Source: Octopus bimaculoides
Lineage: Eukaryota
Length of the DNA stretch: 64,000 nt
NCBI RefSeq assembly: GCF_001194135.2
Contig: NC_068982.1
Location: 89,772,800 to 89,836,799, forward strand
Reading direction: 5' to 3'
Shown in pieces: positions 7,135-40,784 of this stretch (positions are counted from its first letter, which is position 1; the number at the start of each line of letters is the position of its first letter). Below the pieces are notes generated by a model. The model made no database searches, was not told where the DNA came from, and saw only the letters and a program-made list of their open reading frames with translations. The translations under genes were made by a program, and so were the position numbers.

Positions 7135-7166
<32 letters not shown>

Positions 7167-7420
7167 AGTATATATATATGTATGTATATGTATATATCTA
7201 TGCATGTGCATCTTTGTGTCCGTGTTTGTCTCCCATTTCCACTTGACAACCGGTGGTGTTGTGTTTACATCCTCATAAGCTTAAGACACTGATAGAATAA
7301 GAATCGGGCTTAAAAAATAAGTACTGGGGCTGATTCATCTGACTAACCATTCAAAACGGTGCCTCAGTATGACCACAGTCTAATGACTGAAACAGGTAAA
7401 AGATAAAATATAAAAGATAC
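6972..7420 (+). mobile_element. SINE family A; further + copies at about 5476-5877, 9470-9590, 13862-13997 and 27345-27600
   Basis: Same head, core, microsatellite and tail blocks as 12058-12570. Confidence 0.8.
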
Positions 7421-12057: not shown

Positions 12058-12212
12058 TGAGTGGCCGTGTGGTAAGTAGCTTGCTTACCAACCACATGGT
12101 TCCAGGTTCAGTCCTACTGTGTGGCACCTTGGGCAAGTGTCTTCTACTATAGCCTCGGGCCAACCAAAGCCTTATCAGTGGATTTGGTAGACGGAAACTG
12201 AAAGAAGCCCGT

Positions 12213-12245
<33 letters not shown>

Positions 12246-12323
12246 NNNNNNNNNNNNNNNNNNNNNNNNNNNNNNNNNNNNNNNNNNNNNNNNNNNNNNN
12301 NNNNNNNNNNNNNNNNNNNNNNN

Positions 12324-12360
<37 letters not shown>

Positions 12361-12570
12361 CTGTGTGTCTGTGTTTGTCCCCCCCCCCCAACATTGCTTG
12401 ACAACTGATGCTGGTGTGTTTACGTCACCGTAACTTAAGCGGTTCAGCAAAAGAGACCGATAGAATAAGTACTCGACTTCCAAAGAATAAGTCCTGGGGT
12501 CGATTTGCTTGACTAAAGGCGGTGCTGCAGCATGGCCACAGTCAAATGACTAAAACAAGTAAAAGAGTAT
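12058..12570 (+). mobile_element. tRNA-derived SINE family A (CORE-like, octopus OR-type) with internal (TA)n(TG)n; well-preserved copy
   Basis: Head gtggccgtgtggtaag with B-box ggttcagtcc, core ccttgggcaagtgtcttctactatagcc, microsatellite, then tail ggtgctgcagcatggccacagtcaaatgactaaaacaagtaaaaga. Confidence 0.85.
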
Positions 12571-13307: not shown

Positions 13308-14200
13308 GGATTTTGCCAATCCACCTCATAATAATTGTTGATAATGCTAAATTTATTAGAGTATTTAATTGAATTTATTTTCTCTACAAGTGAGGGTTCG
13401 TGTCAGGAAGGGAATCTGGTTGCCTAATACAGAATCTGTCTGACCCATGTAAGCATAGAAAAATGGATGTTAAGATGAGGAGGATGATGATGACATTCAG
13501 AGTTTGAATCTGATTTAGATCTAACATAATAATTTTTTATCACTTGCTTTTTTTTCTAGTTAGTTTGCCATACAGATAAAAAAAAGCATGACCTTCATAT
13601 AGTCATAAAGTGTAAAATGTGAGGTGAAGATGAATAATGAAACATGTGAAAAAGAATTGGAGTATGATATAGTATCTAAATATAATGATTAAATTAATTC
13701 TATTCTTTGATTTAATGTTTTATTTTCTTCTCTACATACACATTTCTAATTAACATTTTTGATGCTTGCTGCATTGGGTATATTAATTGTAAGTTGACTG
13801 TTGCTTTATTTTTTTCTTGAATATGCAGATGATGTCTCTGATTAATTAATGTTAAATGCAGTTTACTTCCCAACCACATGGTTCCAGCATCAGTCCTACT
13901 GTGTGGCAACTTGCACAAGTATCTTATACTATAGCCCTGACTTGACCAAAGCTTTGTGAGTAGTTTTGGTAGATGGAAACTGAAAGAAGCCTGAAGCCTG
14001 TTGTATTCTTTTACTTGTTTTAGTAATTTGACTGCAGCCATGCTGGAGCACTGCTTTGAAGGGTATTAGTTGAGCGAATTAACTTGTTCTTTTTTTTAAG
14101 CCTAGTACTTATTCTATTGGTCCCTGTGGTTGAACAGCTAAGTTACATGAACTCACCAACAGGCGGTTATGGGAGGATAAAAAAAGACACAAACACACAC

Positions 14201-14240
<40 letters not shown>

Positions 14241-14529
14241 GTGACAGGTTTGCTTCAGTTTCCATCAACCAAATTTACTCACAAGGCTTTGGTTGGCCTG
14301 AGGCTATAGAAGACACTTGCCCAAGGTTCTATGCAGTAAGACTGAACCCAAAACCATGTGATTGGGAAGCAAGTTTCTTACCACACAGCCATGCCTGTAT
14401 GTATGTAATGTGTGTGTGCGTGTGTGTGCGCGCGCGCGTATGTATGCACTTATACAGTTTGTTTTGTATATATAATTGCATACAGCCATATTTAACATGT
14501 TTATATGTATTCAGATGTAAGAAGACCTT

Positions 14530-14623: not shown

Positions 14624-15900
14624 CAGGGGCATGCACTCTCAGGCATGTAAGGTATGCGCTGCATGCTCTGTGATTTTTTTATCCATATCATCGGAAAATT
14701 AGATAAAATAGTTACTTTTGTTTCAAAGAAACTCCGTGCAGGTGTTTTCAAAATATTCTGCCTCCCCTTCCCCCTCTCTCACTGACTCGTACGTCTGCTT
14801 TGAGAAGACCACGTAACACCCCCTCTCTGCCTCTTTGTTAGTGTAGAACTGTTGCTAACCTCGTTCCACTTTCTGACCTGGACAAAGGCAATCCCANNNN
14901 NNNNNNNNNNNNNNNNNNNNNNNNNNNNNNNNNNNNNNNNNNNNNNNNNNNNNNNNNNNNNNNNNNNNNNNNNNNNNNNNNNNNNNNNNNNNNNNNNNNN
15001 NNNNNNNNNNNNNNNNNNNNNNNNNNNNNNNNNNNNNNNNNNNNNNNNNNNNNNNNNNNNNNNNNNNNNNNNNNNNNNNNNNNNNNNNNNNNNNNNNNNN
15101 NNNNNNNNNNNNNNNNNNNNNNNNNNNNNNNNNNNNNNNNNNNNNNNNNNNNNNNNNNNNNNNNNNNNNNNNNNNNNNNNNNNNNNNNNNNNNNNNNNNN
15201 NNNNNNNNNNNNNNNNNNNNNNNNNNNNNNNNNNNNNNNNNNNNNNNNNNNNNNNNNNNNNNNNNNNNNNNNNNNNNNNNNNNNNNNNNNNTGTAAACGA
15301 TATTTTGAGAAATAGTTTTTCGAAAAGAGACTTCGATGGAAAACAATTAATTATAAACAGTGGGAGACCAACACCGAATTTACCTAATTTATGAAGCTAC
15401 AAGAAGAAATTCACGAGACAATTTCAGGTTGATTTGTATGAAAAGAAAAAATGGGTAACTGGAAGTGCTACATTTAATAAATTACTCTCTTGGCCTTGTT
15501 TACTTTTTTGTTTAGAAAAGAATGTTTAGAATGATAAAGGTTATGATGATTTAAATAATTTACATATGGCTATGCTAAAGCACGAGCGTTCTCAAAGGCA
15601 TATAAAATCTTTGATAGATCTTAAAATATTTGTGATCTTGTTGAAGCTATGCCAGAACTCTTCAATCTGTGCAAGTTGATTTTGACAATTCCGTCTACCA
15701 CTACTTCTGTAGAGCGATCCTTTTCTGTATTAAGTAGAGTCGAAATATACCAAAGAAATGCGACAGAAGAAAGAAGACTGTCTGGGTTAGCACTAATGTC
15801 AATTGAAAAAGATTTATTACAATTGATGAAAAGAGAAGATCGAAGAATTGAATTAATTTATAAATGAGGTAAATAACATTTTAGAACATTAAAAAAAAAA
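14624..15900 (+). mobile_element. Internally deleted hAT transposon (ZMYM1-like transposase relic) spanning a gap
   Basis: CAGGGGCATGCAC terminus-like start. TTF-type zinc-finger remnant (RQFQVDLYEKKKWVTGS..NKL..PCLLF..KGYDDLNNL..KHERSQRH) is joined directly to the dimerisation motif PELFNLCKLILTIPSTTTSVERSFSVLSRV..R..EERRLSGLALMSIE. Confidence 0.8.
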
Positions 15901-17809
15901 CTTAATATATTAAAGGGCATATATTGCAGGTTTTGGTTAGTGTTTGTTATAACGTAAGTTTCGACCTTCTTACATCAGTATTGTTTCGTAGGAGAAATGG
16001 TTCGACTTCTTCGTCACACCTCACCTACATAGGTTTTCCCTTTCTGTACTGCTGGGTGTAGTCTATTTACGGCTGTAAAAATAAGTGTCTTGTTTCAATC
16101 TCAGAGATGTTGACTTCTGCCACAAGAGTTTTTTTGTCGCGGGTGGGGGTGGGGGCTTTTTACAATGTTGAATTTTGGCAGTCTTTCATTGTGTGTGTAT
16201 TCATGTATATGCGTGTATTTTCAATGTGTGTGCGTGAGACGTAGTCTTTTAATATACGGAGTTCAGTAAGTCTCAGAACAGTCTACTTGAGTTTCAATAA
16301 TTTTCCCCGGAATCAACAAGTAGCATGATAAAGCACCTGACTTGTCTTCGAGAGCGTAACTATCTAAAACCATGGCCATATAATGTAACTAAATGTGTTC
16401 TCTTTATTAAATCAATTCAAATTGATTCAGCTGAACCAATAGGTATAAGGGCTAATGCANNNNNNNNNNCATCTTTATTCCATTTCACTTATGATTTTTA
16501 GACTTTTTTAAGGGAGAGTGAGGATGGGAAAGTACTGACGTTTCGAAGAGAGAGAAAAATACAAACAATACACTTATTTCAGGCTCATCTCTACAGAGCC
16601 ATTTTTTATTCTCTGCTTATTCTAGGTCATACGGGGGTGATTGTATATTCAGAATCTCCCATTTGTAAATCGTAGGAATACGAAAATTCTTTTACTGAAA
16701 AATTGCCAGTGGTGGTGGTGGTTGGTGGTGGGGGGAGAAATTCATTGCATGCCCAACCCCGGAAGTCACCGCATGCCACTGAAGGACATATATGTTTTTG
16801 CTTTCTGTGCACATCATTACTACAGATACAACTTCACCCAACCCTCTAAGAACAATAGTTTTTATTTATAAGAAAAGTAAATAGTACATTTACTGATATA
16901 CATAAAGCTTGATCACTTAGTTCAGTTCTATAGTTTAACATAAGAAAACATTATTCTTCTAAGTGTCACAAATGGAATCTTAGTCACATGATGAAGAGGT
17001 TGATTGTTCAAATCACATCATCAGTGCTATTCTGTATCTTAGATTGAAACTCTTGACAGCCTCGTTGACTGCTTGCTTTCCTATCAACTCTTGACTGTTC
17101 AATTAATTGCCCTGTTAACTATTCAATGAACTTTTAACTATCAAGTGTCCAATGAACCATTGATAGTTCATTTAACTGCTGTCTACTAAACTTTTAACAT
17201 TCCAGTGAACTCTTAGCAGCTCAGTTAACTGTTAATTCTCCAGTAAACAGTTAATACTTTTGTCACCATACAATCAATTTTGAATTACATTCAATTTTGG
17301 AAGTCATGAAGAATTTAGGAAAATGATTGTCATTATTAATCTGGTATTTGGAACATAGCTAAATGATATTTAGATGAAAGGTTTTAATTTTAATCACTTT
17401 AAAACATGAAATTTATATCATAGATTCAGATGAGTTAGTTAGATCTTAGATGTCCAATAATGTTTTAATAATCAGTTAACTTTTGGTAGTCCGCTTAATC
17501 AGTTAACAGTTTAGTCAATTGTCAACAGTACAATTAACTCCTTAATAGTTAATCTATCTTAAACAGTTCAGTTAATAGTTTATTTAATTGCTAACAGTCC
17601 TGTTAACTCTTATCAGTTTAGCCATCTCTTAACAGTCTAATTAATTCTTATTAGTTCAGTCACCTCTTAACAGTCCAATTCATTCTTAATATTCCAAAAA
17701 GATTTTTACAATCCTGCTAGCTCCTAATAGTTCTCTTCATTTAGCTGCGAGTAAATAGTAGACAGTAAAGCATCATTAACAGCACTACAAAATTGAGGAG
17801 TATTTCATT

Positions 17810-18242
17810 ACTCTTACTCTCCTTTACTCTTTTACTTGTTTCAGTCATTTGACTGCGGCCATGCTGGAGCACCGCCTTTTAATCGAGCAAATCGACCCCA
17901 GGACTTATTCTTTGGAAGCCTAGTACTTATTCTATCAGTCTCTTTTGCCGAACTGCTAAGTTACGGGGATGTAAACACACCACCAATGGTTGTCAAGCGA
18001 TGCTGGGGGGGGGGGACAAACACAGACACACAAACATATACACACACCTAGATACATATATATATATATACATATATACGATGGGCTTCTTTCAGTTTCC
18101 GTCTACCAAATTCACTCACAAGGCTTTGGTCGGCCCGAGGTTATAGTAGAAGACACTTGCCCAAGGTGCCATGCAGTGGGATTGAACTCGGAACCATGTG
18201 GTTGGTAAGCAAGCTACTTACCACACAGCCACTCCTGCACCT
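17810..18242 (-). mobile_element. SINE family A, well-preserved full-length copy
   Basis: Reverse complement of the 12058-12570 copy along its whole length. Confidence 0.88.
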
Positions 18243-18661
18243 GTTCACATATTTGATTTAGATTCTTGCTGATGATATGATGTCATTATGAAAGGACTAA
18301 AATAATCACTCTATTTGCAAACAACAAGATATGTATTTCTATTCAGTGAAGAGATTGTGTCTATTGCTTCAGACTGGTGAGCCTGATGAAACCAATGTCC
18401 AGATTGAACATCAGTAGGTCAATGTGTGCACTAAAATGCTTCAAACAGACTAATATCTGCCAAAGTTGTCCAAATAACTATTGATATTAAACCAAGTGGC
18501 ATGGTATGCTTGCCACCCAAAGGATATCCTGGTTTAGTTTAAAAAAATACAGCAATAACAATGACAAACAAGCCAACATAGAAAATCAATAAAAAAATGA
18601 CTCAATAAAAATCTAGTTTCCTATTTTCAAATTGGAAATGTGTATTCCATGTTAGACTTAC

Positions 18662-18915
18662 CTCTCCAAATCTTTGAAGAAGATTCTCAACTGATACTTG
18701 TTTTTTATTTGTTATTGGTCTGATAAGGTCAAGACTAACTTGACGTATGTATTGTGCAGGAGGTATTCGATTGAATAACTCATATTCCGTCTCTGTTAAC
18801 GATAAAGCTACTTCTTCAGGAAAATGAAGAATTTTTTGGATTAATAGAAGTTCTTCAGTATATATATAATTTGTTCCTATATCTGATTGCATCACAAAGT
18901 GCCGCCGGCTATAAT
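18662..18915 (-). CDS. PLCE1: Internal coding exon (phase 1 to phase 0) encoding the start of a CDC25/RasGEF domain of phospholipase C epsilon type; PLC catalytic exons not seen in the window
   Basis: Acceptor tttcatttcattctcttccacAG at 18916 and donor GGAGAG|GTAAGT at 18661. Peptide YSRRHFVMQSDIGTNYIYTEELLLIQKILHFPEEVALSLTETEYELFNRIPPAQYIRQVSLDLIRPITNKKQVSVENLLQRFGE matches recalled human PLCE1 ([23 protein letters not shown].PVDY...RDL...LEDLVMRFNE). The symbol is tentative because only the RasGEF start is visible. Confidence 0.7.
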
Positions 18916-19145
18916 CTGTGGAAGAGAATGAAATGAAAGTTAGTTGTTGTGACAGAAATAATGTAAGCTAAATAAGAAGAAATACAAGAAGGAAGAAGAA
19001 CAAAGAAGAGGGGGCAATAAACACCATGTTTCAATAACAATTGTTATCCTTAAAGGATTTTTAGAGATTCTTGAAGCATGAAATGTAATCAGGTTTATTG
19101 CATTGTCTGTTGTTATTGGTACAAACAAATACCTTATCATTGGTA

Positions 19146-19197
<52 letters not shown>

Positions 19198-20647
19198 GTT
19201 TGTATATGAGATCTTTGGGGTTATTTATTTATTCATTTGTTTGTTTTGCAAATAGAAACCATTCCTAATAATATTTTTCAAATCTCAGTCACTGATATCA
19301 TCCTCCTTCATTCCTGTTATCATCACGATCATCATCATCATCATCATCATCATCAATAGTAGTATCCCATTAGTATCATCATCATCCTTGGTAACATTAT
19401 CATTGCTGTTCAAAGTAATTCTGATGATTAGTATCCTGAACATGATCAATTCAATTAGGATCCTCCTTCTATATCATCATCCTCATCACTATCATCATCA
19501 CCCACCATCATTCTCATCATCATCATCATCATCATCATTTCATTTGTGTTCCTCTATCACTTTCTTGTAATTGGTTGTGCAAGCTAACCAACTTCAAACA
19601 TCTTCAATTCCTCACTACATTGGCATCGAATAACAATGATTAATAACATAGGAATAAGACATAAAATTTGGGGAAATCACAGCTGATTACTGCCATATGA
19701 CATTCTGTGAAGTGCTTTATGCCAATTCTTCCATTTATCACCTCTTCTCTCAGGCAATAACTTTTAAAAATAATTATGAACTACTGTACAGCAAGAAACC
19801 CATTCTGCTCAGTCCCCTTCTCTCATACTTTTGCCCACCTTGCATCTCTCATCTCCTAGCATACATTTTCCCCCACCTCTGGGATTCATAGTCTTGCAAA
19901 CTGTGTAATGACCTCATTAGTGTTGGTGGCATGAAAAAAGCTCCCAGTACACACTGTAAAGTGGTTGGTATTAGGTGAAGATCCAAGCTGTTGAAACCAC
20001 ACTGAAGCAGACACTGAAGTATGATGCAGTTCTTGGGCCTATTGAATTTTGTGAAGCCATCCAACACATGGATCAGGTAGTATATTTTATCTTTGAATAA
20101 GGAGCTTCATTTCACATTGATCCAGTCTACTCAGTTGAAAATGTGCTTATGCCTTGTACCGGTGCCGCGTTGTCTTTTTCTGCTGTCACTTAAGTTCTGA
20201 TGGATTAACGGGAGGGAAGATCAAGAGGTTATCTGTGTCTGCTTATGAATACAAATGCACCGAAGACAGATTTCTTTATTAAGCCATGCAGGGTCGAACA
20301 CAGAGGGAACAATACAATGTAGAAATTTTCTTTTTAAAACCGACCAATAGGAATCATAAACATTTTGGGGCGTGTACACAAAGGATAACAAAGTGTTGTT
20401 TCAAGGCACCTATAATAATTAGCAAAAGCATTGTGCATACTACCAGGTCATACCTGCTTGCAAATATCAGCTATGGGGGTCTTAATATGAGGCTAAAGAC
20501 ATGCCTGAGTTCCAAAAAAGACTAAATCACCTCTTACAGATGACTTTATTTTTACATCTAAAATGATTCTTGTCCATTATTAATACCATTTTTACAATTA
20601 TTTTTTTTAATGCCCTTTGTGATAAATGTTTCAACACTAACTTAACT

Positions 20648-20848
20648 ATTGTAATGTTATTATCAGTCCAATATGCTTGAGGCACATTCAAACTGGAGAA
20701 CAAGCTACTCACTGCATTTTGTCACAGTAAATATATCACACCATTTGTCAACAAATGGATATATTTTCTGTGACAAAACACAGTGAGTAGCTTGTTCTCC
20801 AGTTTGAATTTACCTCAAGTATATTCGGACTGATAATAACATTACAAT
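20648..20848. repeat. Long imperfect palindrome (~95-bp arms, tiny loop)
   Basis: attgtaatgttattatcagtcc..caaactggagaacaagctactcactg..ttgtcacag pairs with ctgtgacaa..cagtgagtagcttgttctccagtttg..ggactgataataacattacaat. Confidence 0.92.
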
Positions 20849-21714
20849 TTTACTTATCACTGCTTAGCACTCCCCCTCTGTAACTTAACTATTGTCTTAT
20901 GCAGATTGAGTCTAAGATTAATTTTATTTCTGGAACATTTGAATTTTCTTATGCCAACAAGTGCGCCCTATTTTATTTTTACCTACATAATACCTACATA
21001 TCACTTTGCTGAGGAGGTCAAATAAGACCAAAACAGGTCAGGAGTTGTTTACCATACTTGACAAAAGAGCTAAATTAGTATTAGTCAATAAGAATGATAG
21101 ATATTGAATTTTTCCTCATCACAGAATTATTTCTAATTGAATTTTTTATATTTCTTATATTAAATATTTTAACAATAACTTTGCTAATATAATATAAGGC
21201 TTGTTTGGATAAGATTATCCAATGATTATTAGCATCACAGAGTCTGCAAGGATAATGGATTCAGTTACCTTCCTTCATTTTGAAGTACACAGGCATAGCT
21301 CTCACTTGCAAGAGAGCATGACTTGGTAGCAGTATCATGCTTTCATTAATTGCTTTAGGTGTTTATGTCATCATAAGTTGGCATAAACAGCTTCTCAATC
21401 TTCCCAGCCTTGATCCAACAGAATGTGAAGATGTGATAGTTGGGGAGAGAGAGAGAGAGAGAAAGGGCTACCCCCTGTACTTGGATATTACTCTTGTTTT
21501 TGTTGAGTAGACCAGAGTAACATAAAATGAAGTGCCTTGCTCAAAGATACAATCTGCTGGAATCAAACTTACAACCTTGTGCTCACAAAACAATACCTTA
21601 ATCCTCTAGGTCATGTGCCCTCACAAGGCAATGTGTCTAAACAATCAAATAAGAAAAAATTGAAGTCTGGGGTTGTAAAACTGATCCAAAATAAAGGAGG
21701 ACAAATTCCTGCTG

Positions 21715-24212
21715 ATGACCAGGTATTTAAGGACATCCTAATTGAGAAATTTGATGAGAGGGAGGAGGAGCTACAGACTTGTGACATAGAAAGCAACTGG
21801 AAATTCCTGTGGAACAGCTTACTGAGTACCACAGACCGGGCGAAATGCTTAGTGGTATTTCGTCTGCCGCTATGTTCTGAGTTCAAATTCCGCCAAGGTC
21901 GACTTTGCCTTTCATCCTTTCAGGGTCGATAAATTAAGTACCAGTTATGCACTGGGGTCGATGTAATGGACTTAATCCCTTTGTCTGTCGTCCTTGTTTG
22001 TCCCCTCTATGTTTAGCCCCTTGTGGGCAATGAAGAAATAAGATAGTGTGTAAGAGAAAATTGTGATGTCACAGGAGAAAAATGTGTCTGCATGGATGAT
22101 GGTGCACTTGCATTTAATGATTCTGCAAAGAAAGAAGCTTGGAGATGCCATTATGAAAGACTGCTGAATGTGGAAAATGAATGGGAGGAGGTGAGTCTGC
22201 CAAATGTTGACCCAATTGCAGGACCAGCTACCCGAATTGACAGTACCTTGGTAGATAAAGTAATTAAGGATATAAAGTCAGGGAAAGCTCCTGGTCCATC
22301 AGGAATTACCACTCGAGATGCTTAAAATATTTGGTGGTGTGGGTTATCAGGTGGTTTACAAAGGCGTCATACCCAATGATTGGTGTAGCAGCACCATAGT
22401 CAACTGCTACAAAGGTAAAGGTGATGCCTTAGAAATAATTACAGAGGTATCAAATTGTTGGATCAGGTGATGAAAGTTACAGAGAGGGTCACAGCCCAAC
22501 TAATTAGGGAGAGAATTAGTCTACATGAGATGCAGTTTGGTTTTGTGCCAGGGAGAAGCATCACTGAAGCTATATTTCCGGTAAGGCAGCTTCAAGAGAA
22601 ATACCTAGTCAAAGATAAACTTACTTCTGTACCTGGCTTTCGTTGACTTGGAGAAAGCCTTTGACAGAGTCCCCTGATCCCTTACCTGGCAGTCAATGTA
22701 AAAATTAAAGATAGATGAGTGGTTGGTGAGAGCTGTACAATCCCTGTACAGGGACGCTACTAGTAAGGTGAGGGTTTGCAATGAGTTCAGCAAAGATTTC
22801 AGGGTACAAATAGGGGTTCACCAAGGATCGGTTCTCAGTCCCCTCTTATTCATCATAGTCCTCCAGGTAATAACAGAGGAATTTAATACAGGCTGCCCTT
22901 GGAAGCTCCTCTATGCTGATGACCTTACTCTTATAGCTGAATCATTACCAGAACTAGAGAAGAAGTTCCAGGTATGGAAGCAAGGTCTAGAATTGAAGGG
23001 CCTTAGAGTTAACCTAGCAAACACCAAAAGTCTTAGTAAGTAGGAAGGTAAACAAATCACAAATCCCTTCAGGTAGATGGCCCTGCTCAATCTGTAGAAA
23101 AGGCATAAGTAGAAACTCCATACGATGCACCCGGTTTAAGCTTTGGATACATAAAAGGTGCAATAATATCAGAGGAAGGTTAATAGGGAAAATAGCTTTT
23201 GTATGTGGAAGATGCACAAGTACAATGAACACCGAAAATATACAGAATATAGACTCCATCAACTGCCGGTGAGGTAAGCTAGAGGTAATAGATAGCTTCT
23301 GTTATCTAGGTGACCAAGTTAGTAGTGTCGGTGGATGCTGTGAGAATGTAGCTGTGAGAATAAGATTAGGCTGGACAAAGTTCAGAGAGCTCCTACCTCT
23401 GCTGGCAACTGTCAGAGTGAAAGGAAAATTGTATGATGCCTGTATGGGAACAGCTATGCTACATGGCAGGGAAACATGGGCTGTAACAGCCGAGGACATG
23501 TGTAGGATTGAAAGGAATGAAGTCAGTATGCTTTAATGGATGTGCAATGTCAGTGTGCATGTTCGACAGAGTGTAAGCATCTTGAGAGAAAAGTTAGGCA
23601 TAAGAGGCATGAGATATGATGTGCAAGAGAGACAACTGGGCTGGTATGGTCATGTGACGTGAATGGACAAGGACAGCTGTGTAAGGAAGTGCCAAACTAT
23701 AACTGTGGAGGGAACCTGTGGTAGAGGTAGATCCAGGAAGACATGGGATGAGGTGGTGAAGCATGATATTTGAACTTTGGACCTCACAGAGGCAATGACT
23801 TTGGCAATATGCTGTACTTAAAGAGACCTGTCAATCCAAGTGAAATCATAGGCATGGCTGATGCTGGTGTCATGTAACTGGCATGTGAAAAGCACCTTTT
23901 GAGCATTGGGTCTCGCAGAGGCAATGACCAAGATATTCGGCATTATATTGTACTTGAGAAGAAGACCCATCAAGCTGAGTAAGATCAAAGTCATGGCAGA
24001 TACCAGTGTCATGCAAATAGCACCCGTGCTGGTGGCATGTAAACGCACACATTACACTTTTGGAGTGGTTGGCGTTAGGAAGGGCATCCAGCCATAGAAA
24101 CCATGCCAAATCAGACTGGAGTCTGGTGCAGCCTTCCGGCTTGCCAGCCATGGTCAAACTGCCCAACCCATGCCAGCATGACGACAGATGTTAAATGATG
24201 ATGATGATGATA
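21715..24212 (+). mobile_element. RTE-clade LINE, disrupted ORF (RT domain and C-terminus) with 3' UTR and (GAT)n tail; SINE nested at 21836-22042
   Basis: Frameshifted RT motifs KAPGPSG, QFGFVPGRS, VDLEKAFDRVP, GVHQGSVLSPLLF, LLYADDL, then RIRLGWTKFREL, MLHGRETWAVT and WYGHV. Confidence 0.92.
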
Positions 24213-25029
24213 ATGATCATTATGAAGGTGTTAAGCTCATGTTCCCGGATTAGGCAGCTTGTCTTGTTTTAAAAGATAGAATATTCAGTTTTACTTTGCA
24301 ATGTGTTTATCTGAAAAGGATCTACAACTGGTCTCCAGGATCTGTGGTTTGGTGTATTCTAAGAAAAATAGAGCAAGGTTCAGTAAGGAATTTAGCATTC
24401 ATGTAAAGGATCGTGAAACATCTGCTCATAGGCACTTCTGTTCTATTGAACTTTTGAATTTAGAACTTAGTGTCTCCGAGAATATTAATTTTATGACCTG
24501 GTTTACAATGAACAAGCTCTGAGGAAGATAGGTGTGTGTAGGGGTGGTGGTAGATAAACCAAATGGACATGGTTAAGGGGTTTTTGTTCAAGAAGCTACG
24601 AAGTAGAATCAAAGACTCATTATAATTGCAAAGCAAACTTCTTAATTACTCGTGTGTGTGTGTGTGTCTCATCATTAGTATCATTCTAATGTCTACTTTT
24701 TCATACCAGTATGGGTCAAACGAAATTTGTTATCACCAATCCTACCTATTTCCTAGTAACACAATATTTCACCTAGTCCTTTGAACATGAACAGTACAAT
24801 AATCAGGTATGATTTCACAGAAAATAGCAAACTACTGAGACAGTGTCTTTGAAGGTGACTTGGATTTGCAATTAACATGCCCTGTCAAGACAAGGAGACT
24901 TGTCTTGATAATGCATGTTAATAGTGAATAAATGTCACTGCACACACACATATGCACACACATGCATGCACACACATGCATGCACACACATGCATGCATG
25001 ATGGCTTCTCACTATTTCTGTCTATCAAA

Positions 25030-26060
25030 TCTGCTTGCAAGGCTTAAGAATGCAAGAAAAGTATTGTTATTTCTAGTAATTTTAACTGGGTGTAAAAGAA
25101 AGGTGATGAACTCTAATATTGCAAAAGAAACCTATATCAGAAATGAAACTGTGGATCTAATTGGGCTAACTATCCTATATAAGCTAAGCAATGAAGTAAA
25201 AGAGGTCAATGTATGATTATATTGGAACAGTGGAGTTGTCAAAGTAGTTTCTAACCAAAATGGACATAATATGGATCATATTAAGAAAAATATCTAATCT
25301 AAAAATCACTATCCACTCTAATCTTGGAACAGTTACTTGCTTAGACATCCCCATGGACTATAATATTATAATTATTATCATCTCCTATAAACTAAATGAA
25401 GAAATCACCTTCATAAATAGAGGCTCCAACTACTTATTTTATGTTATTAAACAGGTCACCAAAAAGTATAAGCAAACATTTCTAGCTTATATTCAGATAA
25501 AGCTACCCTACACTACAATACCTAACACACTAGCAAGGTCTGACTTCAATGAGTGTATCATCTATATTGAATTCACCCAACTATATCTAGAAGACACAAG
25601 TATAAAGGATTTGTGGTTCAATTGATCATATAAAATGAGCATAACTACAAACATAGCTTGATGTTTCTTCACCCTAGTCAACATTCACTTCTCACAAATA
25701 CATAGATGTTCTAAAGTATTTAATTGTAGTACTGTTAAAGTAAGTTATAACTGTCTACCTAATCTTGATTCATAAATCTTTGACCACAACAAAAAAGTTT
25801 AACTTAAGTAACACCCCCACAAGATTTATGCTTTCAGTCATCGTTTTAACAGAAAATGCTTTAAGAAAGAAATGATACACAGAAAAGACTTTTCCAGTGT
25901 ATACAGTTTAACAGAATCCACTATTGGACTCACGGAGAACATCTTTAAAGTAGTCATCCAAATCCCTTCTTTTCCTTTGGCAACTCCTGTGCACACAAGC
26001 CACACTCTAACAGCTACATAAAACTCACAAATATTACACAAATAACCCACGATCTATATA
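25030..26060 (+). mobile_element. Penelope-like element relic: RT thumb, linker and C-terminal GIY-YIG endonuclease
   Basis: Decayed motifs ETVDLIGLTILYKL, LKITIHSNLGTVTCLD, YKLNEEITFINRGSN..VIKQ, LARSDF, LWFN, KVFN.STVKVSY.CLPN, HNKK and IGLTENIFK, in Penelope/Poseidon order. Confidence 0.75.
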
Positions 26061-26222
26061 AGACTACAAAATGGTGGTGAGCTGACAAAATTGCTAGCAT
26101 GCTGAGCAAAATGCTTTGTGGCAATTCGTTTGTGTTTATGGTCCACCAAGCTTGACCTTGCCTTTCATCCTTTTGGGATTATTAAAATAAGTTTTTAACT
26201 ACAAAGCCATGCCCACAGCTAA

Positions 26223-26224
<2 letters not shown>

Positions 26225-26281
<57 letters not shown>

Positions 26282-26300
26282 TGTGTATGTGTGTGTGTGT
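26225..26300. repeat. (TG)n microsatellite, representative of many: (TA)n at 3438, 19148, 33855, 38711 and 44491; (TAT)n at 40785; (CAT/GAT)n at 19320-19540, 35760-35955 and 39380-39430; (CA)n at 6693, 7140 and 38200
   Basis: Directly visible simple repeats. Confidence 0.95.
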
Positions 26301-27896
26301 AAATATCGAAAAGTTGCTATTTCAAATCAGATGGCCTGACATACTAGTACATTCTAGTGAAACATGTGTAAAGACTATGTAATTTATGATGTTATGATAA
26401 AAATTTTAATCGAATTTCCAGATATATTCTGCTCTTGGATGTGTGTGTATGTGTACATACACACACACACACACATATATATATGTATATATATATATCT
26501 GCAAATGCATATCCATTCACACACAAATGGCACATGTGTACATATATGTAGATGTTGTAAATTAGTTGCATGTACCAACCATGAAGTGGTTGCTTGTTCT
26601 CACTGAACCAAATCTTCATACTAGCCTCAATTACAATTTGAAATATGTTCATTTATGCTATTAATATTATCATTTTCATTGAATCAACTGAACTTGATAT
26701 GTATAAGGAATAAATCAATATCAGGACTATATCACAATATCATTTAATTTACACCGAAAAAAAGTAAACCCAGTGAATGTTAAAACTATTAATCAATATA
26801 AGATGCAAGTGTGGTGCCAAAATCTTTTGTGACAAAAGCCAATAATTATATAATTATTGGTTTTTGTCTTAATTGAATTAATAAATATATGTTTTCATTT
26901 TACCATTTCTTAATGAAAGGTTTTGAATTACAGAAAATAACTGAAATAAAATGTCTAAATGAAAATTTCTTTCTTTAAAAAGATAAGATTGTGGAATAGT
27001 TAAACAACAAGAAAACAGGTAGGCTTTGATATCCTTATAATTAGCTTGTTTGTACTTAACCGAAGTTCAACACTCAGGAAGCAGATCTATAATGAAAGTG
27101 TTCCTACCATGACAATCCAGTTTCAGTTTCAGACACTGTATCTGTGTCTTTCAGTGAAATCTAGAATGGAATACTCCAATAGTTACTGATCCACCCCTGC
27201 CTAAACCACAGCTTGAGTTGTAACCTCCATAGAATACTACTTCTACATCAGAGCCATTACTGTTATTGCACCGATAGATATTCTTAATCACATGTAGTTT
27301 TTCCAATACAAAAATATATATTCACTAATAACATAGGTACTGGTTTGCCTTTGTAGTTAAGAAGTTTGATACAAAGCCATATCATTTCAGGCTTAGTCAC
27401 ACTGCATGGTACCTCGGCCAAGTGTTTTCTACTATAACCCCAGACTGACCAATGCTGCATTTATCATATATACCTGTGTATGCATATACTTGTGTTTACC
27501 TATGTGTGTCTGTGTCCATGTGTGTGTTTGTGTGGTTATTTACATTTGCCCTTCTTTGAAAATGACTGAGGTACTTAGTGGTGTCTCATTTCCCTGTCCG
27601 CAAATCATCCTCTAGTTTACACTTTTGAAGATGTAGAACAATGCCTTAACATCCATCTGTAGAACAATGCCTTAACAATATATTCATCTAACCCATGTTA
27701 ACATAAAAAACTAATGTAAAAAAAGAAAAACTTCTATTACAAAGGAAATATCAAATATTCATAAATATTCATTGAAAGTAATGAAAAAAAATTATTGATA
27801 TGACATTTTTGAGTGATAAAATGAATCATTTAATCTTTTCTTGCTGACAACAAAATATATGATTTTGTTTTCAAGCAAAGCAATAAAAAGGCTTAC

Positions 27897-28182
27897 CAAA
27901 ATCTAAACTGTTTCTTCGTAAACCACTAGATGTAAGGAAACGGCCCTCAATATCCATGGCTTCCCAAAGAGCTGCAGCTACATACTTCAGATTTTCAACC
28001 GAAGGTGTTGTCAGTATCCATGGTTTAGCACCTCGAAACTCCAGTACTAGTCCACCATGGGCTCGATCTTCTCCAGTATACCACTCTTGCAAATCACCGA
28101 TGTATTCTGATTTTACTAATGCCTTACTCTTGTGGTCAAGTAAAATGATCTTTTCATGCGTTATACCCAGTAACCTGGATAC
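27897..28182 (-). CDS. Internal coding exon (phase 0 to phase 1) encoding a talin/kindlin-like FERM F3 (PTB-fold) subdomain
   Basis: Minus strand acceptor tttctcttctaatattttgacAG at 28183 and donor TTTG|GTAAGC at 27896. Stop-free 286 nt: VSRLLGITHEKIILLDHKSKALVKSEYIGDLQEWYTGEDRAHGGLVLEFRGAKPWILTTPSVENLKYVAAALWEAMDIEGRFLTSSGLRRNSLDF. It aligns by eye with talin F3 as I recall it (VPRLLGITKE..RVDEKTKE..W..FTLDF). Confidence 0.8.
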
Positions 28183-28258
28183 CTGTCAAAATATTAGAAG
28201 AGAAATGTGCATATGTTAAATACAGAGGAAGATTATGTGAAAGAATATGAAATCAACA

Positions 28259-30244: not shown

Positions 30245-32116
30245 TTTCATCAAATCAAACCTTCATCAAATCAAACTTTCTGTGTCAAAAGTGCAAGGAC
30301 ATGTTAGATAATGCAGTTTTAATTATTTTATGTAATGTCAAAAAAATGATGGCTAGTAATAGCTAGAAAATCATTCATGTTAGGTTTGTTTGATCAGGTT
30401 TGATTCTGTGTCAAACAATAATAAACATTTACCAGTAAATAGATAGTTCTTATTTTGAATACAAATTTTGCCACTTGGAACGTCCATCTACTTTTAATAA
30501 AATATAATATACTCTTGAATATTGTTGCACTTTAAGAATGTCATTTTGCCAATAAACACATATTCTGATTTACTTCAGTTAAAGTTTTATTGTTTGGTAA
30601 TTTAACATAAATTTTCCTTCACACTATTGTAACATTTCCAATTATCTAAAATTTGGAATCCTTGAAAAGGTCATAGCAGTGTTATGAAAAACTTACTACA
30701 AATTAATTAAAAATTAAAATCAAAACTAGTGTACCATAGCATGTGTATGTGCTTCATGTCAGTATGTCCTCTGAAAGTACAACAATGTAAGTAATATCAG
30801 ATTCAAAAATGTGGTTTTACATTAAGATTCTTGCAATAAAATTCAAACTGAATCCATGAAAATGCAATGCAATAAGCTTTGAGGGATATAATGCAAATTT
30901 AATGATATAATAAGAAACAAATAAGAGAAGGAATATTTAACATCTATTTGTCATTGTGACATATTTTGACAAATCGATAAATCTTCTGTATGACCCTTTT
31001 ATTAATATTCTAAACAAAAGCATTTTCTAAAAATTTCATAAAATTAACATTCAATATTTTTCTTCGGGAAATATTCCTCAGTTTTTATTTGCAATAAATG
31101 TTGAGTTGTGGCCATTATGTCTATAGCTTTATGTATAACATATTCACAAACATTTTATATTTCAAAACTAAAAGTTTTGTTTTTTCAACCCTTTCAGAAT
31201 TATATTGCAATTTATTTTGGGTGCTCAACCCTTAGGATGGAAACTGCTGATGTATAAGCTCTAATATAAGGAGTTCAGTTTCTGAAATCAGACTACACTG
31301 TGTTTTCCTGATGGATTATGCTTTACCATAGTGAAGCTATCTAAATATAGACAACAGTTATATCCTATTTCAATGTAGCATGTACAATGATTGTAAAGCA
31401 ACTGTAATTTATTCTGAGGTAAGTTTTTATAAAACCACCTTGAGTTTGCTGGCATTAAAAAATTTCTAAAATATCTCTAGATATTCTGTGCTGTAATAGA
31501 TCTTAGTTACTGTAGCATCATTAATGAATTTCTTTTCAGAGGCATTTAAATTCTTAGTTACACCTTCTTCCCTTCTTCAGGAAAATTAAAAGTTTTGAAG
31601 ACAATTTTGGCAGAGGCTAATCATAGGATTATAAACTGGGTAATTTTCTGTCAAAGACTTTGGGCAATTTTGTGAAAATTTAATCACAGAACTACAAATC
31701 TNNNNNNNNNNAGAGGCTAATCATAGGATTATAAACTGGGTAATTTTCTGTCAAAGACTTAGGGCAATTTTGTGAAAATTTAATCACAGAACTACAAATC
31801 TAATTATATGTTAATCTACAGTCAGGGATTGATTTGAGTTTTACCTGAGTTGCATCTTAACTTAGAATATCCAGATAGGTTATAATTTGCTGTCAGAATT
31901 ATAGTAAATCATGTTCATGAAGTTGCAAACTAAACGGTCATGTTTACATTTGAATTTTTATAGCTCTGTAGATTCTACTGTAGTCTAACTAATGTACAGT
32001 TAAGTACACAAAAGCTGGAAGTTGAAGTAATAACACTAGACGGAGTGTATTTTCATGTACCATAGGACATATGATGGTGTGTGATGGGAAGTATGTCGAA
32101 GTGTTCAGGGGATATA

Positions 32117-34675: not shown

Positions 34676-34765
<90 letters not shown>

Positions 34766-34803
34766 AGCTACATGCAATCAGATTTTGTCTATTAAATCCA
34801 CTC
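34636..34803. repeat. Palindrome with ~40-bp unique arms around a (TA)n core
   Basis: gagtggatttaatagacaaaaactgattgcatgtagctgga (TA)n tccagctacatgcaatcagattttgtctattaaatccactc. Confidence 0.9.
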
Positions 34804-35419
34804 ATAAGGCTTTGGTTTTTTGAGGCTCCAGTAGAAGACATTTGCCCAAGGTACCACACAGTGGCACTGAACTGCACAGTTGGGAAGCAAATTTCTAACA
34901 AAACAGTCGAGACTGCACCTATACACACACACATATACTTGCATAAACACACATACACAAATATATACATATACTATATATATATGTATATACAAATCTC
35001 TCTCTCTCTTTCTCTCTTTCTCTCTCTCTCTCTCTNNNNNNNNNNNNNNNNNNNNNNNNNNNNNNNNNNNNNNNNNNNNNNNNNNNNNNNNNNNNNNNNN
35101 NNNNNNNNNNNNNNNNNNNNNNNNNNNNNNNNNNNNNNNNNNNNNNNNNNNNNNNNNNNNNNNNNNNNNNNNNNNNNNNNNNNNNNNNNNNNNNNNNNNN
35201 NNNNNNNNNNNNNNNNNNNNNNNNNNNNNNNNNNNNNNNNNNNNNNNNNNNNNNNNNNNNNNNNNNNNNNNNNNNNNNNNNNNNNNNNNNNNNNNNNNNN
35301 NNNNNNNNNNNNNNNNNNNNNNNNNNNNNNNNNNNNNNNNNNNNNNNNNNNNNNNNNNNNNNNNNNNNNNNNNNNNNNNNNNNNNNNNNNNNNNNNNNNN
35401 NNNNNNNNNNNNNNNNNNN

Positions 35420-38748: not shown

Positions 38749-40784
38749 AGNNNNNNNNNNTTTGTTAGTATGGAATGTCCAGCATGATTATGTCTCTGTA
38801 ATATATAAATTTTATAAGTGGCGACACAACACATTTTCTTGGGTCTGCTGTCATTCTAAACTAGTTTGCTCTGTGTCATTTAAGAGCATTTAAAAATATT
38901 TCTAAAATTGTCTTTGTGTGTTTATGTTATTTAATTTTATGTATTTATCTTAGTATTTATTTCTCTCATCTCTTATTTGGTCTTTTGTAGCTTCTGTTTA
39001 TTTATTTCTCTTACTAAGCGAAATGCTGTGTTTGGAATTGTTTTTCCAGTAACAGAATATTCTATTATTTCTGATAGCACTGTCTCTTCCAAGATCAGCA
39101 AAGCTGTTTTTGCTTTTTGTTGTATTTTTTCATTTTCATTTTGTTCTATCATTTAGTTTCCTATGCTAGCATAGTTGGGATGAGACCAGCTTTTGTAAAT
39201 TTAGATATTGTTGAATACCTTTACAGCTGTCAATTATGCCATTATGAAGAAGCAGTGACTTTGGCTGTGAGTCAGGCAGTTTAACATAAGTCAAATAATG
39301 TTTTTTTCTTAGAAACACAATGCAATATTTATAAAGTGAATTCGTCTCATGTCGGCAGTAATTCTGAATATTATATCTACGATGATGACGACGACGATGA
39401 TGATGACGATAATGATGATGATGATGATCATCATCCTTTAATGTCCATTATCCTTGCTGGTATGGGTCAATGGTTTGACCAGAGCCTCCAAGCTAGAGAG
39501 CAGCACCAGGTTCCAGTCTGATTTGGCTTGGTTTCTATGGCTGTATGGCCTTCCTAATGCCAACCACTTTACAGTGTGCTGGGTGCTTGTAGTGTGGCAC
39601 TAAACGAGTGCTTTTATGTGGCACTGCCACAGAATTCTTGCAGGCTAATCCTCTTCACCAAGGGGTGCGACCTTAACACTTCTGCTGTGGAGGATATATT
39701 TTCTTGAGTTGGTAAGGCATTAATTCCATCAGTCCTGTAATATTCATTTTCCCTACATTTAGGGACTCTGTTTATGGACACAAAACCAACAGGAGGCCAC
39801 TCTTCTTCATCATATAATATGCTAAAAATAGCAGCCAAATTCCTTCAAATCATAGCTTACCATTTTAAAAATGGAATGGCATGCTGAATTATGTACACTT
39901 CTTTTGTCCCACATTCACCTTTTCTATATCCGTTGTTTCAGGATTGACCTCATCTTCTCATTTTGTTACTAGAATGATTTTAATCCTAAATATGCTTAAT
40001 TAGTTTTGCCCAAAAGTGAAACAACAACAATTATTTGAACAGCAGATGTCTAGTACCTTTGCTTGCTGGTTATAATCTGCATCATATTAAAATCCTTCAC
40101 CTCTTTATGTCATCTTATGTATTTCTGTCTGATATGGTTTCATCTGGTTGTTATAGTTAACTAACTTGGATTGATTTCATTTCAGAATATCATATTTTAT
40201 TACATTTTTCTTTTATTAAAGCACTAAGTACTAGACAGAGTAGGTAATAGGCCTACATTACCAAAATCTAGGGGAAGGGGTTTCACACAAATTCCGAACT
40301 ACTGAAACACAATTTCTTAATCCAGATAAAAACATGAAAACTTAATAACAAAGTGGAAAAGTAAGATCAAAAAGGATACAGAACTGGAGCAGTGTTGGGC
40401 AGATGAAATAAGATGGTAGTGTAGTGTTATAACCTATTCCATAATTTGGCATGGAAAATTTCAAACTTTACCAGATTTAATCTGTTATAATGGATTTCCT
40501 CAGAGATCTGCATAATCATTAAAGCTATAGATTTCACGTTCACAAATTGATTATAATTTTCAGACTGCATTTTTCAGATGGTGCAAAGAGGGTGATAATT
40601 GTTAGAAATACATTACACAAAACCTGGAGTAGGGGTGCATGCTGTTGGGCTGGCCTGAGGCACAGAATATTCTAGTGATAGTCCCATTACTTTTAATTAT
40701 AATTAGCTACCAAAACACTAATCTGTAAAATCAATTTTGGAAATCTGTTTTCTTCCAGGTTCTTCATTTTGTTGCTGCTGTTAC

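What the first reader, a model, noticed from the sequence alone, without database searches (positions are those of the whole stretch)
18662..28182. Talin-like FERM F3 module spliced in frame to a PLC-epsilon-type RasGEF domain
Seen: two minus-strand exons with strong splice sites and matching phases give one continuous peptide, VSRLLGITHEK...MDIEGRFLTSSGLRRNSLDF-D-YSRRHF...HFPEEVALSLTETE...ENLLQRFGE. Established: V(P)RLLGITxE..D.KxK begins the talin F3 PTB-like subdomain, which binds integrin tails; FPEEVA..RFxE opens the CDC25 domain of PLC-epsilon, a Rap1 GEF. The vertebrate PLCE1 N-terminus as I recall it has no FERM domain. Inference: a FERM-RasGEF(-PLC) protein that could couple membrane/integrin binding directly to Rap/Ras activation. 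I do not know whether this architecture has been described in molluscs.
Basis: partly seen in the sequence, partly recalled or inferred. Interest (0 to 1): 0.8.

Follow-up and report, generated by a model that had tools for sequence, protein, structure and literature searches.

The report
Exons of a FERM-bearing long PLC-epsilon
These are two real, spliced exons of an invertebrate phospholipase C-epsilon gene whose long form carries a talin-like FERM module just before its Ras/Rap-activating domain. The architecture is real, but many invertebrates share it and it was already noted for C. elegans PLC-1.

Summary
Minus-strand exons 28182..27897 and 18915..18662 have AG/GT boundaries and compatible phases, and they join into a 180-aa peptide. 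More than ten long proteins from gastropods, arachnids, insects, nematodes, an acanthocephalan, a starfish and an acorn worm match it end to end (best E 6e-52). In those proteins the matched stretch lies between a Pfam FERM_M (F2) domain, which ends 14 residues upstream, and a RasGEF domain that starts at peptide residue 130. EF-hand-like, PLC-X/Y, C2 and two RA domains follow, and the full-length forms (about 3,500-3,800 aa) begin with ankyrin repeats. A profile of the exon-A region hits talin F3 (E 7.7e-10). A confident AlphaFold model of the spider orthologue's F2-F3 matches talin F2F3 best in Foldseek (E 2.5e-12). Exon A is under strong purifying selection (pN 0.07, pS 0.90). So the architectural reading is right, with two corrections: exon A starts at strand β2 of F3, and no F1 lobe was found. 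The novelty claim fails. Pfam detects the FERM domain in public orthologues, and Tomioka et al. 2022 reported a FERM domain in the long isoform of C. elegans PLC-1. Integrin binding is untested. Only these two exons of the gene lie in the window.

The parts
27897..28182 (-). Coding exon A (286 nt, starts in phase 0, ends in phase 1). It encodes strands β2-β7 and the C-terminal helix of a talin-like FERM F3 (PTB-like) subdomain, plus the start of the linker (peptide residues 1-95 and the first base of codon 96).
   Evidence: Translation and splice sites. Orthologue alignments. Family profile against PDB hits talin F3 at E 7.7e-10. Secondary-structure mapping on the spider model. Exon-limited conservation and pN 0.07 vs pS 0.90.
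18916..27896 (-). Intron of 8,981 nt (GTAAGC...CACAG, phase 1) between exons A and B. It is rich in repeats. No further exon of this gene was detected in it.
   Evidence: Orthologues align across the junction with no missing residues. Profile HMM searches of all six-frame open segments found only exons A and B. Dispersed repeats.
18662..18915 (-). Coding exon B (254 nt, starts in phase 1, ends in phase 0). It encodes the F3-CDC25 linker (about residues 96-125) and the first ~50 residues of the CDC25/RasGEF domain ('LHFPEEVALSLTETEYELF...LLQRFGE').
   Evidence: In orthologues the Pfam RasGEF domain starts at the residue equivalent to peptide position 130 (P0153 2057, P0003 720). The frame stops at 18605, and the only GT before that stop is the GTAAGT at 18661.

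Best explanation
The window carries two consecutive internal exons of the orthologue of the long, FERM-bearing form of phospholipase C-epsilon. The organism is probably a lophotrochozoan, because gastropods are the closest named relatives at about 50% identity. Full-length orthologues have this order: N-terminal ankyrin repeats, a long poorly characterised region, FERM F2-F3 (talin-like, no F1 detected), a ~45-residue linker, CDC25/RasGEF, EF-hand-like, PLC X, PLC Y, C2, RA1 and RA2. Exon A supplies most of F3. Exon B supplies the linker and the start of the GEF domain. Shown here: the exons, their join, their selection, the F2-F3 fold and the orthologues' architecture. Inferred from established knowledge: (a) as in other FERM/PTB modules (talin, KRIT1), F2-F3 probably tethers the enzyme to acidic phospholipids and/or short motifs in receptor cytoplasmic tails; (b) this would place the adjacent Rap/Ras exchange domain and the PIP2-hydrolysing core at a defined membrane site; (c) the C-terminal RA domains then bind the Ras/Rap-GTP produced, giving the feed-forward activation known for vertebrate PLC-epsilon. 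In C. elegans the long isoform with this N-terminal region is genetically required for a neuronal learning behaviour. A shorter isoform that starts just before the CDC25 domain also exists there, so the F3-to-CDC25 junction is probably specific to the long isoform.
For: Exon structure and join. Contiguous 1-180 matches in P0002/P0003/P0153/P0161 (gastropods), P0007/P0167 (tick), P0008/P0170 (spider), P0033 (Saccoglossus), P0051 (nematode) and P0132 (acanthocephalan), and nearly complete matches (to residue 156-160) in P0046 (Asterias) and P0022 (Adelges). Pfam on those proteins gives FERM_M at 29.8-47.2 bits in seven proteins (cut-off 23.8; below it in P0002 at 22.6 and P0022 at 13.1), ending 14 residues before the exon-A equivalent where checked (P0153, P0003). 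It also gives RasGEF at about 1e-27, EF-hand_like, PI-PLC-X at about 1e-62, PI-PLC-Y, C2, RA x2 and N-terminal Ank. Proteins predicted on metagenome and read-assembly contigs (P0065, P0080, P0098) carry the F2 motif, F3 and the CDC25 start in one polypeptide. The F3 profile hits talin-1/2 as the top 24 PDB sequences (best E 7.7e-10). The AF2 model of the spider F2-F3 has pLDDT 87 and pTM 0.76, and Foldseek ranks talin-2/1 F2F3 first (E 2.5e-12, target TM 0.72-0.79), then KRIT1, kindlin, merlin, myosin X and ERM. Purifying selection on exon A. C. elegans PLC-1(L) has a Pfam FERM domain in its isoform-specific N-terminus, and the long-isoform deletion pe1238 has a phenotype: PMC8752840. PLC-epsilon CDC25 is a Rap1 GEF needed for sustained activation: PMC12627389.
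Against: No other exon of the gene (F1/F2 upstream, the rest of CDC25 and the PLC core downstream) could be found in the 64-kb window. That this particular gene continues into a PLC rests on orthology, not on its own sequence. No transcript evidence is available. The 180-aa peptide alone gives no Pfam hit and a poor AF2 model (pLDDT 56), so the domain calls rely on family profiles and on orthologues. No F1 lobe was seen; the ~70 residues before F2 in the spider model are helical. The membrane or tail-binding role is not tested anywhere, and the talin residues that contact the integrin membrane-proximal helix (K357/R358) are not conserved.
Confidence: 0.85

Rival explanations
1. The two exons belong to different genes or transcripts, a FERM-protein gene and a separate PLC-epsilon/RasGEF gene. 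The in-frame join would then be coincidental, or an artefact of fused gene models.
For: No RNA evidence is available here. Some public models start just before the CDC25 domain (P0093, P0129), and C. elegans has short isoforms without the N-terminal region (PMC8752840).
Against: The join is contiguous in independent predictions from at least six phyla. It is also contiguous in single proteins predicted on metagenome contigs (P0065, P0080, P0098). Orthologue residues 2022|2023 map exactly to the exon A/B boundary. Phases match and no stop is created.
Confidence: 0.03
2. The junction is real but is used only in a minority long isoform. The main product would be a short PLC-epsilon transcribed from a promoter or first exon inside the 9-kb intron and spliced into exon B, so most of the protein in the cell would lack the FERM module.
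For: C. elegans PLC-1 exists as long and short isoforms. RefSeq-type models P0093 and P0129 begin 20-35 residues before 'LHFPEEVA', about where exon B starts. This reading is compatible with the best explanation rather than exclusive of it.
Against: No alternative first exon could be recognised in 18916..27896, though such exons are short and poorly conserved. Exon A is under strong purifying selection, so the long form is functional.
Confidence: 0.3
3. The F2-F3 module is not a membrane or receptor-tail adaptor. Instead it is an intramolecular regulator or spacer of the exchange domain, sitting between a cryptic REM-like helical region and the CDC25 domain. This would resemble the RA domain of Epac2 or the PDZ+RA of PDZ-GEF, which are inserted between REM and CDC25.
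For: F3 lies only ~45 residues from the CDC25 start. No F1 was detected. A conserved 'HPxIxxRLLxH' block plus a helical hairpin upstream of F2 resembles a REM domain. Support is sub-threshold: Pfam RasGEF_N at E 0.035 in P0022, and the SOS2 REM region aligned over the whole profile at E 6.4.
Against: The REM similarity is not significant, and the best PDB hits of that profile were GGA VHS domains at E 0.007-0.04. The F3 β5 strand and the Trp equivalent to talin W359 are invariant across phyla, which is what a conserved peptide-binding groove would predict. No model of an F3-CDC25 interface was obtained; the 180-aa model was of low confidence.
Confidence: 0.2
4. The exons are relics of a decaying gene (pseudogene).
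For: Neighbouring exons are not visible in 64 kb, and the window is dominated by repeats and assembly gaps.
Against: Both exons are intact with consensus splice sites. Exon A differs from a related species almost only at synonymous sites (pN 0.071, pS 0.90). Invariant family residues are retained.
Confidence: 0.02

Closest known systems
C. elegans PLC-1 long isoform, PLC-1(L) (PLC-epsilon homologue; Tomioka et al. 2022, PMC8752840)
   Same: It is an invertebrate PLC-epsilon whose long N-terminal extension contains a Pfam FERM domain upstream of the CDC25 domain. Nematode proteins of ~3,500 aa (P0051, P0084) match the window peptide (P0051 over residues 3-178; P0084 in two stretches), and P0051 was confirmed as a nematode, Auanema.
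   Different: It is from a different phylum and shares only about 35-41% identity over the 180 aa. The paper reports the domain only as a Pfam box. It does not resolve F2/F3, the talin affinity, the ankyrin repeats or the phylogenetic spread. The C. elegans sequence itself was not retrieved here.
Vertebrate PLC-epsilon (PLCE1)
   Same: The body is the same: CDC25, PH, EF hands, X/Y, C2, RA1 and RA2. The 'HFPEEVA...RFNEVSSW' opening of the CDC25 domain is a family signature in the invertebrate orthologues.
   Different: According to the literature, the AF2 model of the rat enzyme has no predicted structure in its first ~500 residues (PMC12501065), and the N-terminal 836 residues apart from CDC25 are called uncharacterised (PMC12627389). 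No FERM domain and no ankyrin repeats are described. I could not obtain a vertebrate sequence to test this directly.
Talin head F2-F3
   Same: It is the best sequence-profile match (E 7.7e-10) and the best structural match (Foldseek E 2.5e-12). It shares the 'YG..F.VKE...(basic loop)...RLLGI..E.i.llD.KTK......W' pattern, the Trp359 equivalent and the Asp369 equivalent (Glu here).
   Different: The orthologues have no F0/F1, no rod domain and no I/LWEQ module. Structural identity is about 20%. Talin K357/R358 are not conserved. This is not a talin.
KRIT1/CCM1 (ankyrin repeats + FERM, a Rap1 effector)
   Same: It combines ankyrin repeats and a FERM domain in a Rap1-pathway protein. It is the second-best structural family (Foldseek E ~1e-10).
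   Different: KRIT1's ankyrin repeats abut a complete F1-F2-F3 FERM domain, and Rap1 binds at F1-F2. Here the ankyrin repeats are 650 to more than 1,300 residues upstream, and no F1 was found.
FARP1/FARP2 (FERM-DH-PH RhoGEFs) and Epac2/PDZ-GEF (domains inserted between REM and CDC25)
   Same: They are precedents for a FERM domain fused to a GEF (FARP) and for extra domains placed just upstream of a CDC25 domain in Rap GEFs (Epac2, PDZ-GEF). This comparison rests on my own knowledge and was not tested here.
   Different: FARPs act on Rho-family GTPases through DH-PH domains. Epac and PDZ-GEF insert RA or PDZ domains, not F2-F3.

Membership tests
PLC-epsilon (PLCE1 / PLC-1 orthologue group) | CDC25/RasGEF domain N-terminal to the PLC core | tested here: met
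   Exon B aligns to the first ~50 positions of the Pfam RasGEF domain in orthologues (domain start = peptide residue 130; RasGEF E about 1e-27 in P0153, P0003, P0007, P0033). Only the start of the domain lies in the window, and the peptide alone gives no Pfam hit.
PLC-epsilon (PLCE1 / PLC-1 orthologue group) | PI-PLC X and Y catalytic boxes, C2 domain and two C-terminal RA domains in the same polypeptide | not testable with these tools
   These exons are not in the 64-kb window. All full-length proteins that match the 180 aa contiguously have them, so membership is inferred by orthology.
FERM domain | F3 lobe with a PH/PTB-like fold (7-stranded sandwich plus C-terminal helix) | tested here: met
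   The family profile that includes the window peptide hits talin F3 at E 7.7e-10. The spider orthologue model has 7 strands and a helix at pLDDT 90 or more over most of F3, and matches FERM F2F3 structures. Exon A covers β2 to α1.
FERM domain | F2 lobe (helical, acyl-CoA-binding-protein-like) directly before F3 | tested here: met
   This was tested in orthologues only. Pfam FERM_M scores 29.8-47.2 bits in seven proteins against a cut-off of 23.8, and falls below it in two (P0002 22.6, P0022 13.1). Foldseek alignments of 210-230 columns span F2 and F3. The F2 exons are not in the window.
FERM domain | F1 lobe (ubiquitin-like) completing the cloverleaf | tested here: inconclusive
   No orthologue gave a FERM_N, RA or ubiquitin-like Pfam hit upstream of F2, even at E<=1. 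The ~70 residues before F2 in the spider model are three helices. An F1 further upstream, beyond an insertion, is not excluded.
Talin family | F0-F1-F2-F3 head plus helical-bundle rod with vinculin-binding sites and a C-terminal I/LWEQ actin-binding module | tested here: not met
   The orthologues give no talin-specific Pfam families. F3 is followed by RasGEF and PLC domains. The module is talin-like in F2-F3 only.
REM-CDC25 type RasGEF | REM (RasGEF_N) domain upstream of the CDC25 domain | tested here: inconclusive
   Only sub-threshold signals were found: RasGEF_N at E 0.035 (14.7 bits against a cut-off of 28.3) in P0022, and SOS2 REM at E 6.4 with a spliced profile.

The most novel reading that the evidence does not exclude
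The ancestral bilaterian PLC-epsilon was a ~3,500-aa scaffold. It carried N-terminal ankyrin repeats, a cryptic REM-like region and an F1-less, talin-derived F2-F3 module wedged directly in front of the CDC25 domain. That module would gate Rap/Ras exchange activity in response to a receptor-tail motif or PIP2. Vertebrates would have replaced it with the conserved but disordered ~500-residue N-terminus whose function is still unknown. If so, invertebrate long isoforms such as this one offer a structured, tractable handle on what the PLC-epsilon N-terminus does.
Probability: 0.2. Interest if true: 0.55.

Novelty: new member of a known kind. Interest (0 to 1): 0.3.

Why it matters
The N-terminus of PLC-epsilon is the least understood part of an enzyme that matters in heart, kidney and cancer signalling. 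Recent structural papers call it uncharacterised and find no predicted structure in the rat protein. Invertebrate long isoforms, including this gene, carry a well-folded talin-like F2-F3 module right next to the Rap/Ras exchange domain, and ankyrin repeats at the far N-terminus. This gives a concrete hypothesis for how the ancestral enzyme was targeted, namely membrane or receptor-tail anchoring of a combined GEF and lipase. C. elegans, where the long isoform already has a phenotype, is a genetic system in which to test it. For this window alone the finding is ordinary genome annotation: two exons of an orthologue whose architecture is already in public databases and has been mentioned in print.

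Tried and rejected
1. The search for homologous proteins was run three times: with the 180-aa peptide, with an 11-sequence profile, and with the Saccoglossus CDC25 domain. It returned only a 110-aa fragment (P0001) or short insect/unnamed RasGEF fragments. It retrieved no vertebrate PLCE1, so I could not test directly whether the vertebrate N-terminus keeps a degenerate F2-F3.
2. Pfam and PDB searches with the 180-aa peptide alone gave no Pfam hit and only E 0.4-1.3 to talin F3. Family profiles were needed.
3. AlphaFold2 on the 180-aa window peptide gave pLDDT 56, which is unusable. The fragment lacks β1 of F3 and most of the CDC25 domain.
4. I searched the window for further exons of the gene with tblastn (six orthologues) and with two profile HMMs over all six-frame open segments of 12 aa or more. 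Nothing turned up beyond exons A and B. The apparent extension of the exon-B alignment past 18662 ('EVSLTW' against 'EVSSWV') was rejected. It runs into a stop at 18605 with no other donor, and GTAAGT itself encodes the 'VS'.
5. I first suspected that the two-stretch hits (P0080, P0068, P0065 and others) were vertebrate PLCE1 large-exon ORFs. They are not. They are N-rich invertebrate-type orthologues with an insertion inside F3.
6. The REM-domain hypothesis for the region upstream of F2 stayed sub-threshold.
7. Pfam on ten other long ORFs of the window gave no hits, and no tRNAs were found.
8. The organism could not be identified. The nearest fragments (P0001, P0004) carry no names.

Full report
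OBSERVATION. On the minus strand, 28182..27897 (286 nt) is preceded by ...TTTTGACAG and followed by GTAAGC. 18915..18662 (254 nt) is preceded by a pyrimidine-rich tract ending CACAG and followed by GTAAGT. Exon A ends one base into a codon, and that G plus the AT that opens exon B gives Asp. The join is 540 nt and reads VSRLLGITHEK...NSLDF-D-YSRRHF...HFPEEVALSLTETE...LLQRFGE, 180 codons with no stop. The open frames around the exons are short (28185..27874 and 18967..18605), so the boundaries cannot move by more than a codon or two.

IS IT REAL? A full HMMER scan of 1.84 billion representative proteins gave 214 hits at E<=1e-3, of which 75 are at E<=1e-10. The best two (E 6.2e-52 and 7.0e-50, 49-50% identity) align to residues 1-180 as a single stretch. 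tblastn of the 3,844-aa Bradybaena protein puts residues 1927-2022 on exon A and residues from 2023 on exon B, so nothing is missing at the junction. Many short hits from genomic contigs of other animals start or stop near residue 95/96, which suggests the intron position is old. A 1.2-kb contig from a related, unnamed species aligns to the window only over 28192..27892, with AG and GT at the same positions. Across the exon it differs at 90% of synonymous sites but only 7% of non-synonymous sites. This is a functional coding exon under strong purifying selection.

WHAT THE PROTEIN IS. Names recorded by the sources include '1-phosphatidylinositol 4,5-bisphosphate phosphodiesterase epsilon-1' for snail, tick, spider and acorn-worm proteins. 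The ~3,500-aa aphid-relative and starfish proteins are labelled 'uncharacterized', and the nematode and acanthocephalan ones 'unnamed' or 'hypothetical'. Pfam on these proteins gives the same order every time. FERM_M (F2) scores 29.8-47.2 bits in seven of the nine proteins scanned, against a curated cut-off of 23.8. It falls below the cut-off in the partial snail protein P0002 (22.6) and in Adelges P0022 (13.1). Where I checked (P0153, P0003), FERM_M ends 14 residues before the exon-A equivalent. RasGEF (E about 1e-27) begins at the residue equivalent to peptide position 130. Then come EF-hand_like, PI-PLC-X (E about 1e-62), PI-PLC-Y, C2 and two RA domains. The full-length forms (3,500-3,800 aa) also have ankyrin repeats near the N-terminus. 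Proteins predicted on metagenome or read-assembly contigs (P0065, P0080, P0098) contain the F2 motif, F3 and the CDC25 start in one polypeptide. Such gene calls are normally unspliced, so I read them as single open reading frames (an inference). This argues against a gene-model fusion artefact.

IS EXON A A FERM F3, AND IS IT TALIN-LIKE? The peptide alone is not enough: it has no Pfam hit, and talin F3 scores only E 0.4-1.3. An 11-sequence profile of the region (window peptide plus orthologues) hits talin-1/talin-2 F3 as the top 24 PDB sequences, the best at E 7.7e-10. Myosin VIIa (E 0.005) and kindlin-3 (about 0.5) follow far behind. An AlphaFold2 model of the spider orthologue's F2-F3 region (57-sequence alignment) is confident, with mean pLDDT 87 and pTM 0.76. 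It shows a helical F2 followed by seven strands and a long C-terminal helix. Foldseek against the PDB ranks talin-2 and talin-1 F2F3 first (E 2.5e-12 to 1e-10, target-normalised TM 0.72-0.79, about 20% identity). KRIT1, kindlins, merlin, myosin X and ERM proteins come next.

Mapping the exon onto the model shows that exon A starts at strand β2 (VNRLLGIG in the spider protein, VSRLLGIT here) and runs through β7 and the helix. Strand β1 ('YGC.vFQVKE') and the basic β1-β2 loop are encoded by the preceding exon, which is not in the window. The Trp equivalent to talin W359 on β5 is invariant, and talin D369 is matched by Glu. Talin K357/R358 are Gln/Glu in the window peptide (talin numbering from my own knowledge). 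No F1 lobe was detected. No ubiquitin-like or FERM_N hit appears even at E<=1, and the residues before F2 in the model are helical. What is shown is therefore a talin-like F2-F3 pair, not a complete cloverleaf.

THE REST OF THE GENE. tblastn with six orthologues, and two profile HMMs run over every open segment of 12 aa or more, found only exons A and B in the 64 kb. The neighbouring introns therefore exceed about 18.6 kb (downstream) and about 35.8 kb (upstream), or the missing exons lie in one of the nine N-gaps. That this gene carries F2 upstream and a PLC core downstream is inferred from orthology.

HOW IT PROBABLY WORKS. Established knowledge: the PLC-epsilon CDC25 domain is a Rap1 exchange factor needed for sustained activation, and the RA2 domain binds Ras/Rap-GTP (PMC12627389). 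FERM F2-F3 modules of talin and KRIT1 bind acidic phospholipids and short motifs in receptor tails. Inference: in the long isoform, F2-F3 anchors the enzyme at a particular membrane site or receptor, so that Rap/Ras activation and PIP2 hydrolysis occur there and reinforce each other. Integrin binding specifically is not supported by any test. An alternative, which I rate at about 0.2, is that F2-F3 regulates the adjacent exchange domain intramolecularly. It sits ~45 residues from it and follows a conserved helical region that looks REM-like, but only below significance.

COMPARISON WITH WHAT IS KNOWN. For vertebrates, recent structural work states that the AF2 model has no predicted structure in the first ~500 residues of rat PLC-epsilon and that only CDC25 (510-780) is ordered (PMC12501065). 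A 2025 review calls the N-terminal 836 residues largely uncharacterised apart from the CDC25 domain. A 2026 JBC review mentions neither FERM domains nor invertebrate forms. For invertebrates, however, Tomioka et al. [quoted passage not shown] They also report that a deletion specific to the long isoform (pe1238) impairs salt-avoidance learning, and that putative Akt sites in that region are required. In addition, Pfam FERM_M scores above threshold in public orthologues, several of them named PLC epsilon-1.

VERDICT. The architectural interpretation is right, with two corrections: F3 starts one exon earlier, and only F2-F3 is demonstrated. The novelty claim and the integrin inference do not stand. 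This is a new member (probably lophotrochozoan) of a known kind. What this analysis adds is incremental: the module is specifically talin-like by sequence and by predicted structure, it apparently lacks F1, it is accompanied by N-terminal ankyrin repeats, and it is spread across protostomes and ambulacrarian deuterostomes. Interest 0.3.

Noticed in passing
window 17825-18249, 14004-14397, 12059-12569, 6972-7407, 5480-5870, 1577-1940, 48291-48571, 53606-53957, 34720-34927: A dispersed repeat of about 400 bp is present in at least nine copies on both strands, at 66-91% identity. One copy lies ~400 bp downstream of exon B. It looks like a SINE-type element. ARAGORN found no tRNA-like head.
   Followed up: partly
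window 54295-55480 (+), with inverted copies 55096-55216 / 56071-55951: A string of ORF fragments in shifting frames includes a canonical CCHC zinc knuckle (CFNCGQKSHSRAHC, within 55019-55165). A 121-bp inverted duplicate (93% identity) lies nearby. It looks like a decayed gag-like retroelement. Pfam gave no hit.
   Followed up: partly
window 2-280 (-): An ORF fragment containing 'LDGLPYEFY...VTLVRK' resembles the N-terminal part of a LINE-type reverse transcriptase and is cut by the window edge. It has no Pfam hit. A related piece is repeated at 23601-23850 and 43696-43822.
   Followed up: partly
window 2436-3113, 12246-12323, 14897-15291, 16460-16469, 31702-31711, 35036-35419, 38751-38760, 43824-44490, 53234-53603: Nine runs of N (2,602 bases in all) are assembly gaps. 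Three are exactly 10 N, which is a gap of unknown size. Short exons of the gene could be hidden in them.
   Followed up: no
orthologues, e.g. P0046 1062-1170, P0170 699-870, P0098 515-1060: All long orthologues share a conserved block 'HPxIxxRLLxH' followed, after a variable insertion, by a helical hairpin ('...vL.lL..W.....DL......l..F...L...'), upstream of F2. The pattern resembles a REM (RasGEF_N) domain, but support is sub-threshold only (Pfam E 0.035; SOS2 REM E 6.4).
   Followed up: partly
P0080, P0068, P0065, P0052, P0034, P0083, P0098 (metagenome / Logan contigs): These are Asn-rich, apparently intron-poor orthologues from unnamed organisms. They carry an insertion of roughly 40-60 residues inside F3, between β5 ('DLKSWFSGDGYYNLTP') and β6 ('LFVIEFRN.KW'), and a ~150-250-residue low-complexity linker before the CDC25 domain. 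The F3 fold therefore tolerates a large loop there.
   Followed up: partly
whole window: GC content is about 34%, with abundant (TA)n, (CA)n and (TATG)-type microsatellites that translate as YIYIYI or HTHTHT runs in many ORFs. Two exons in 64 kb implies very long introns.
   Followed up: no
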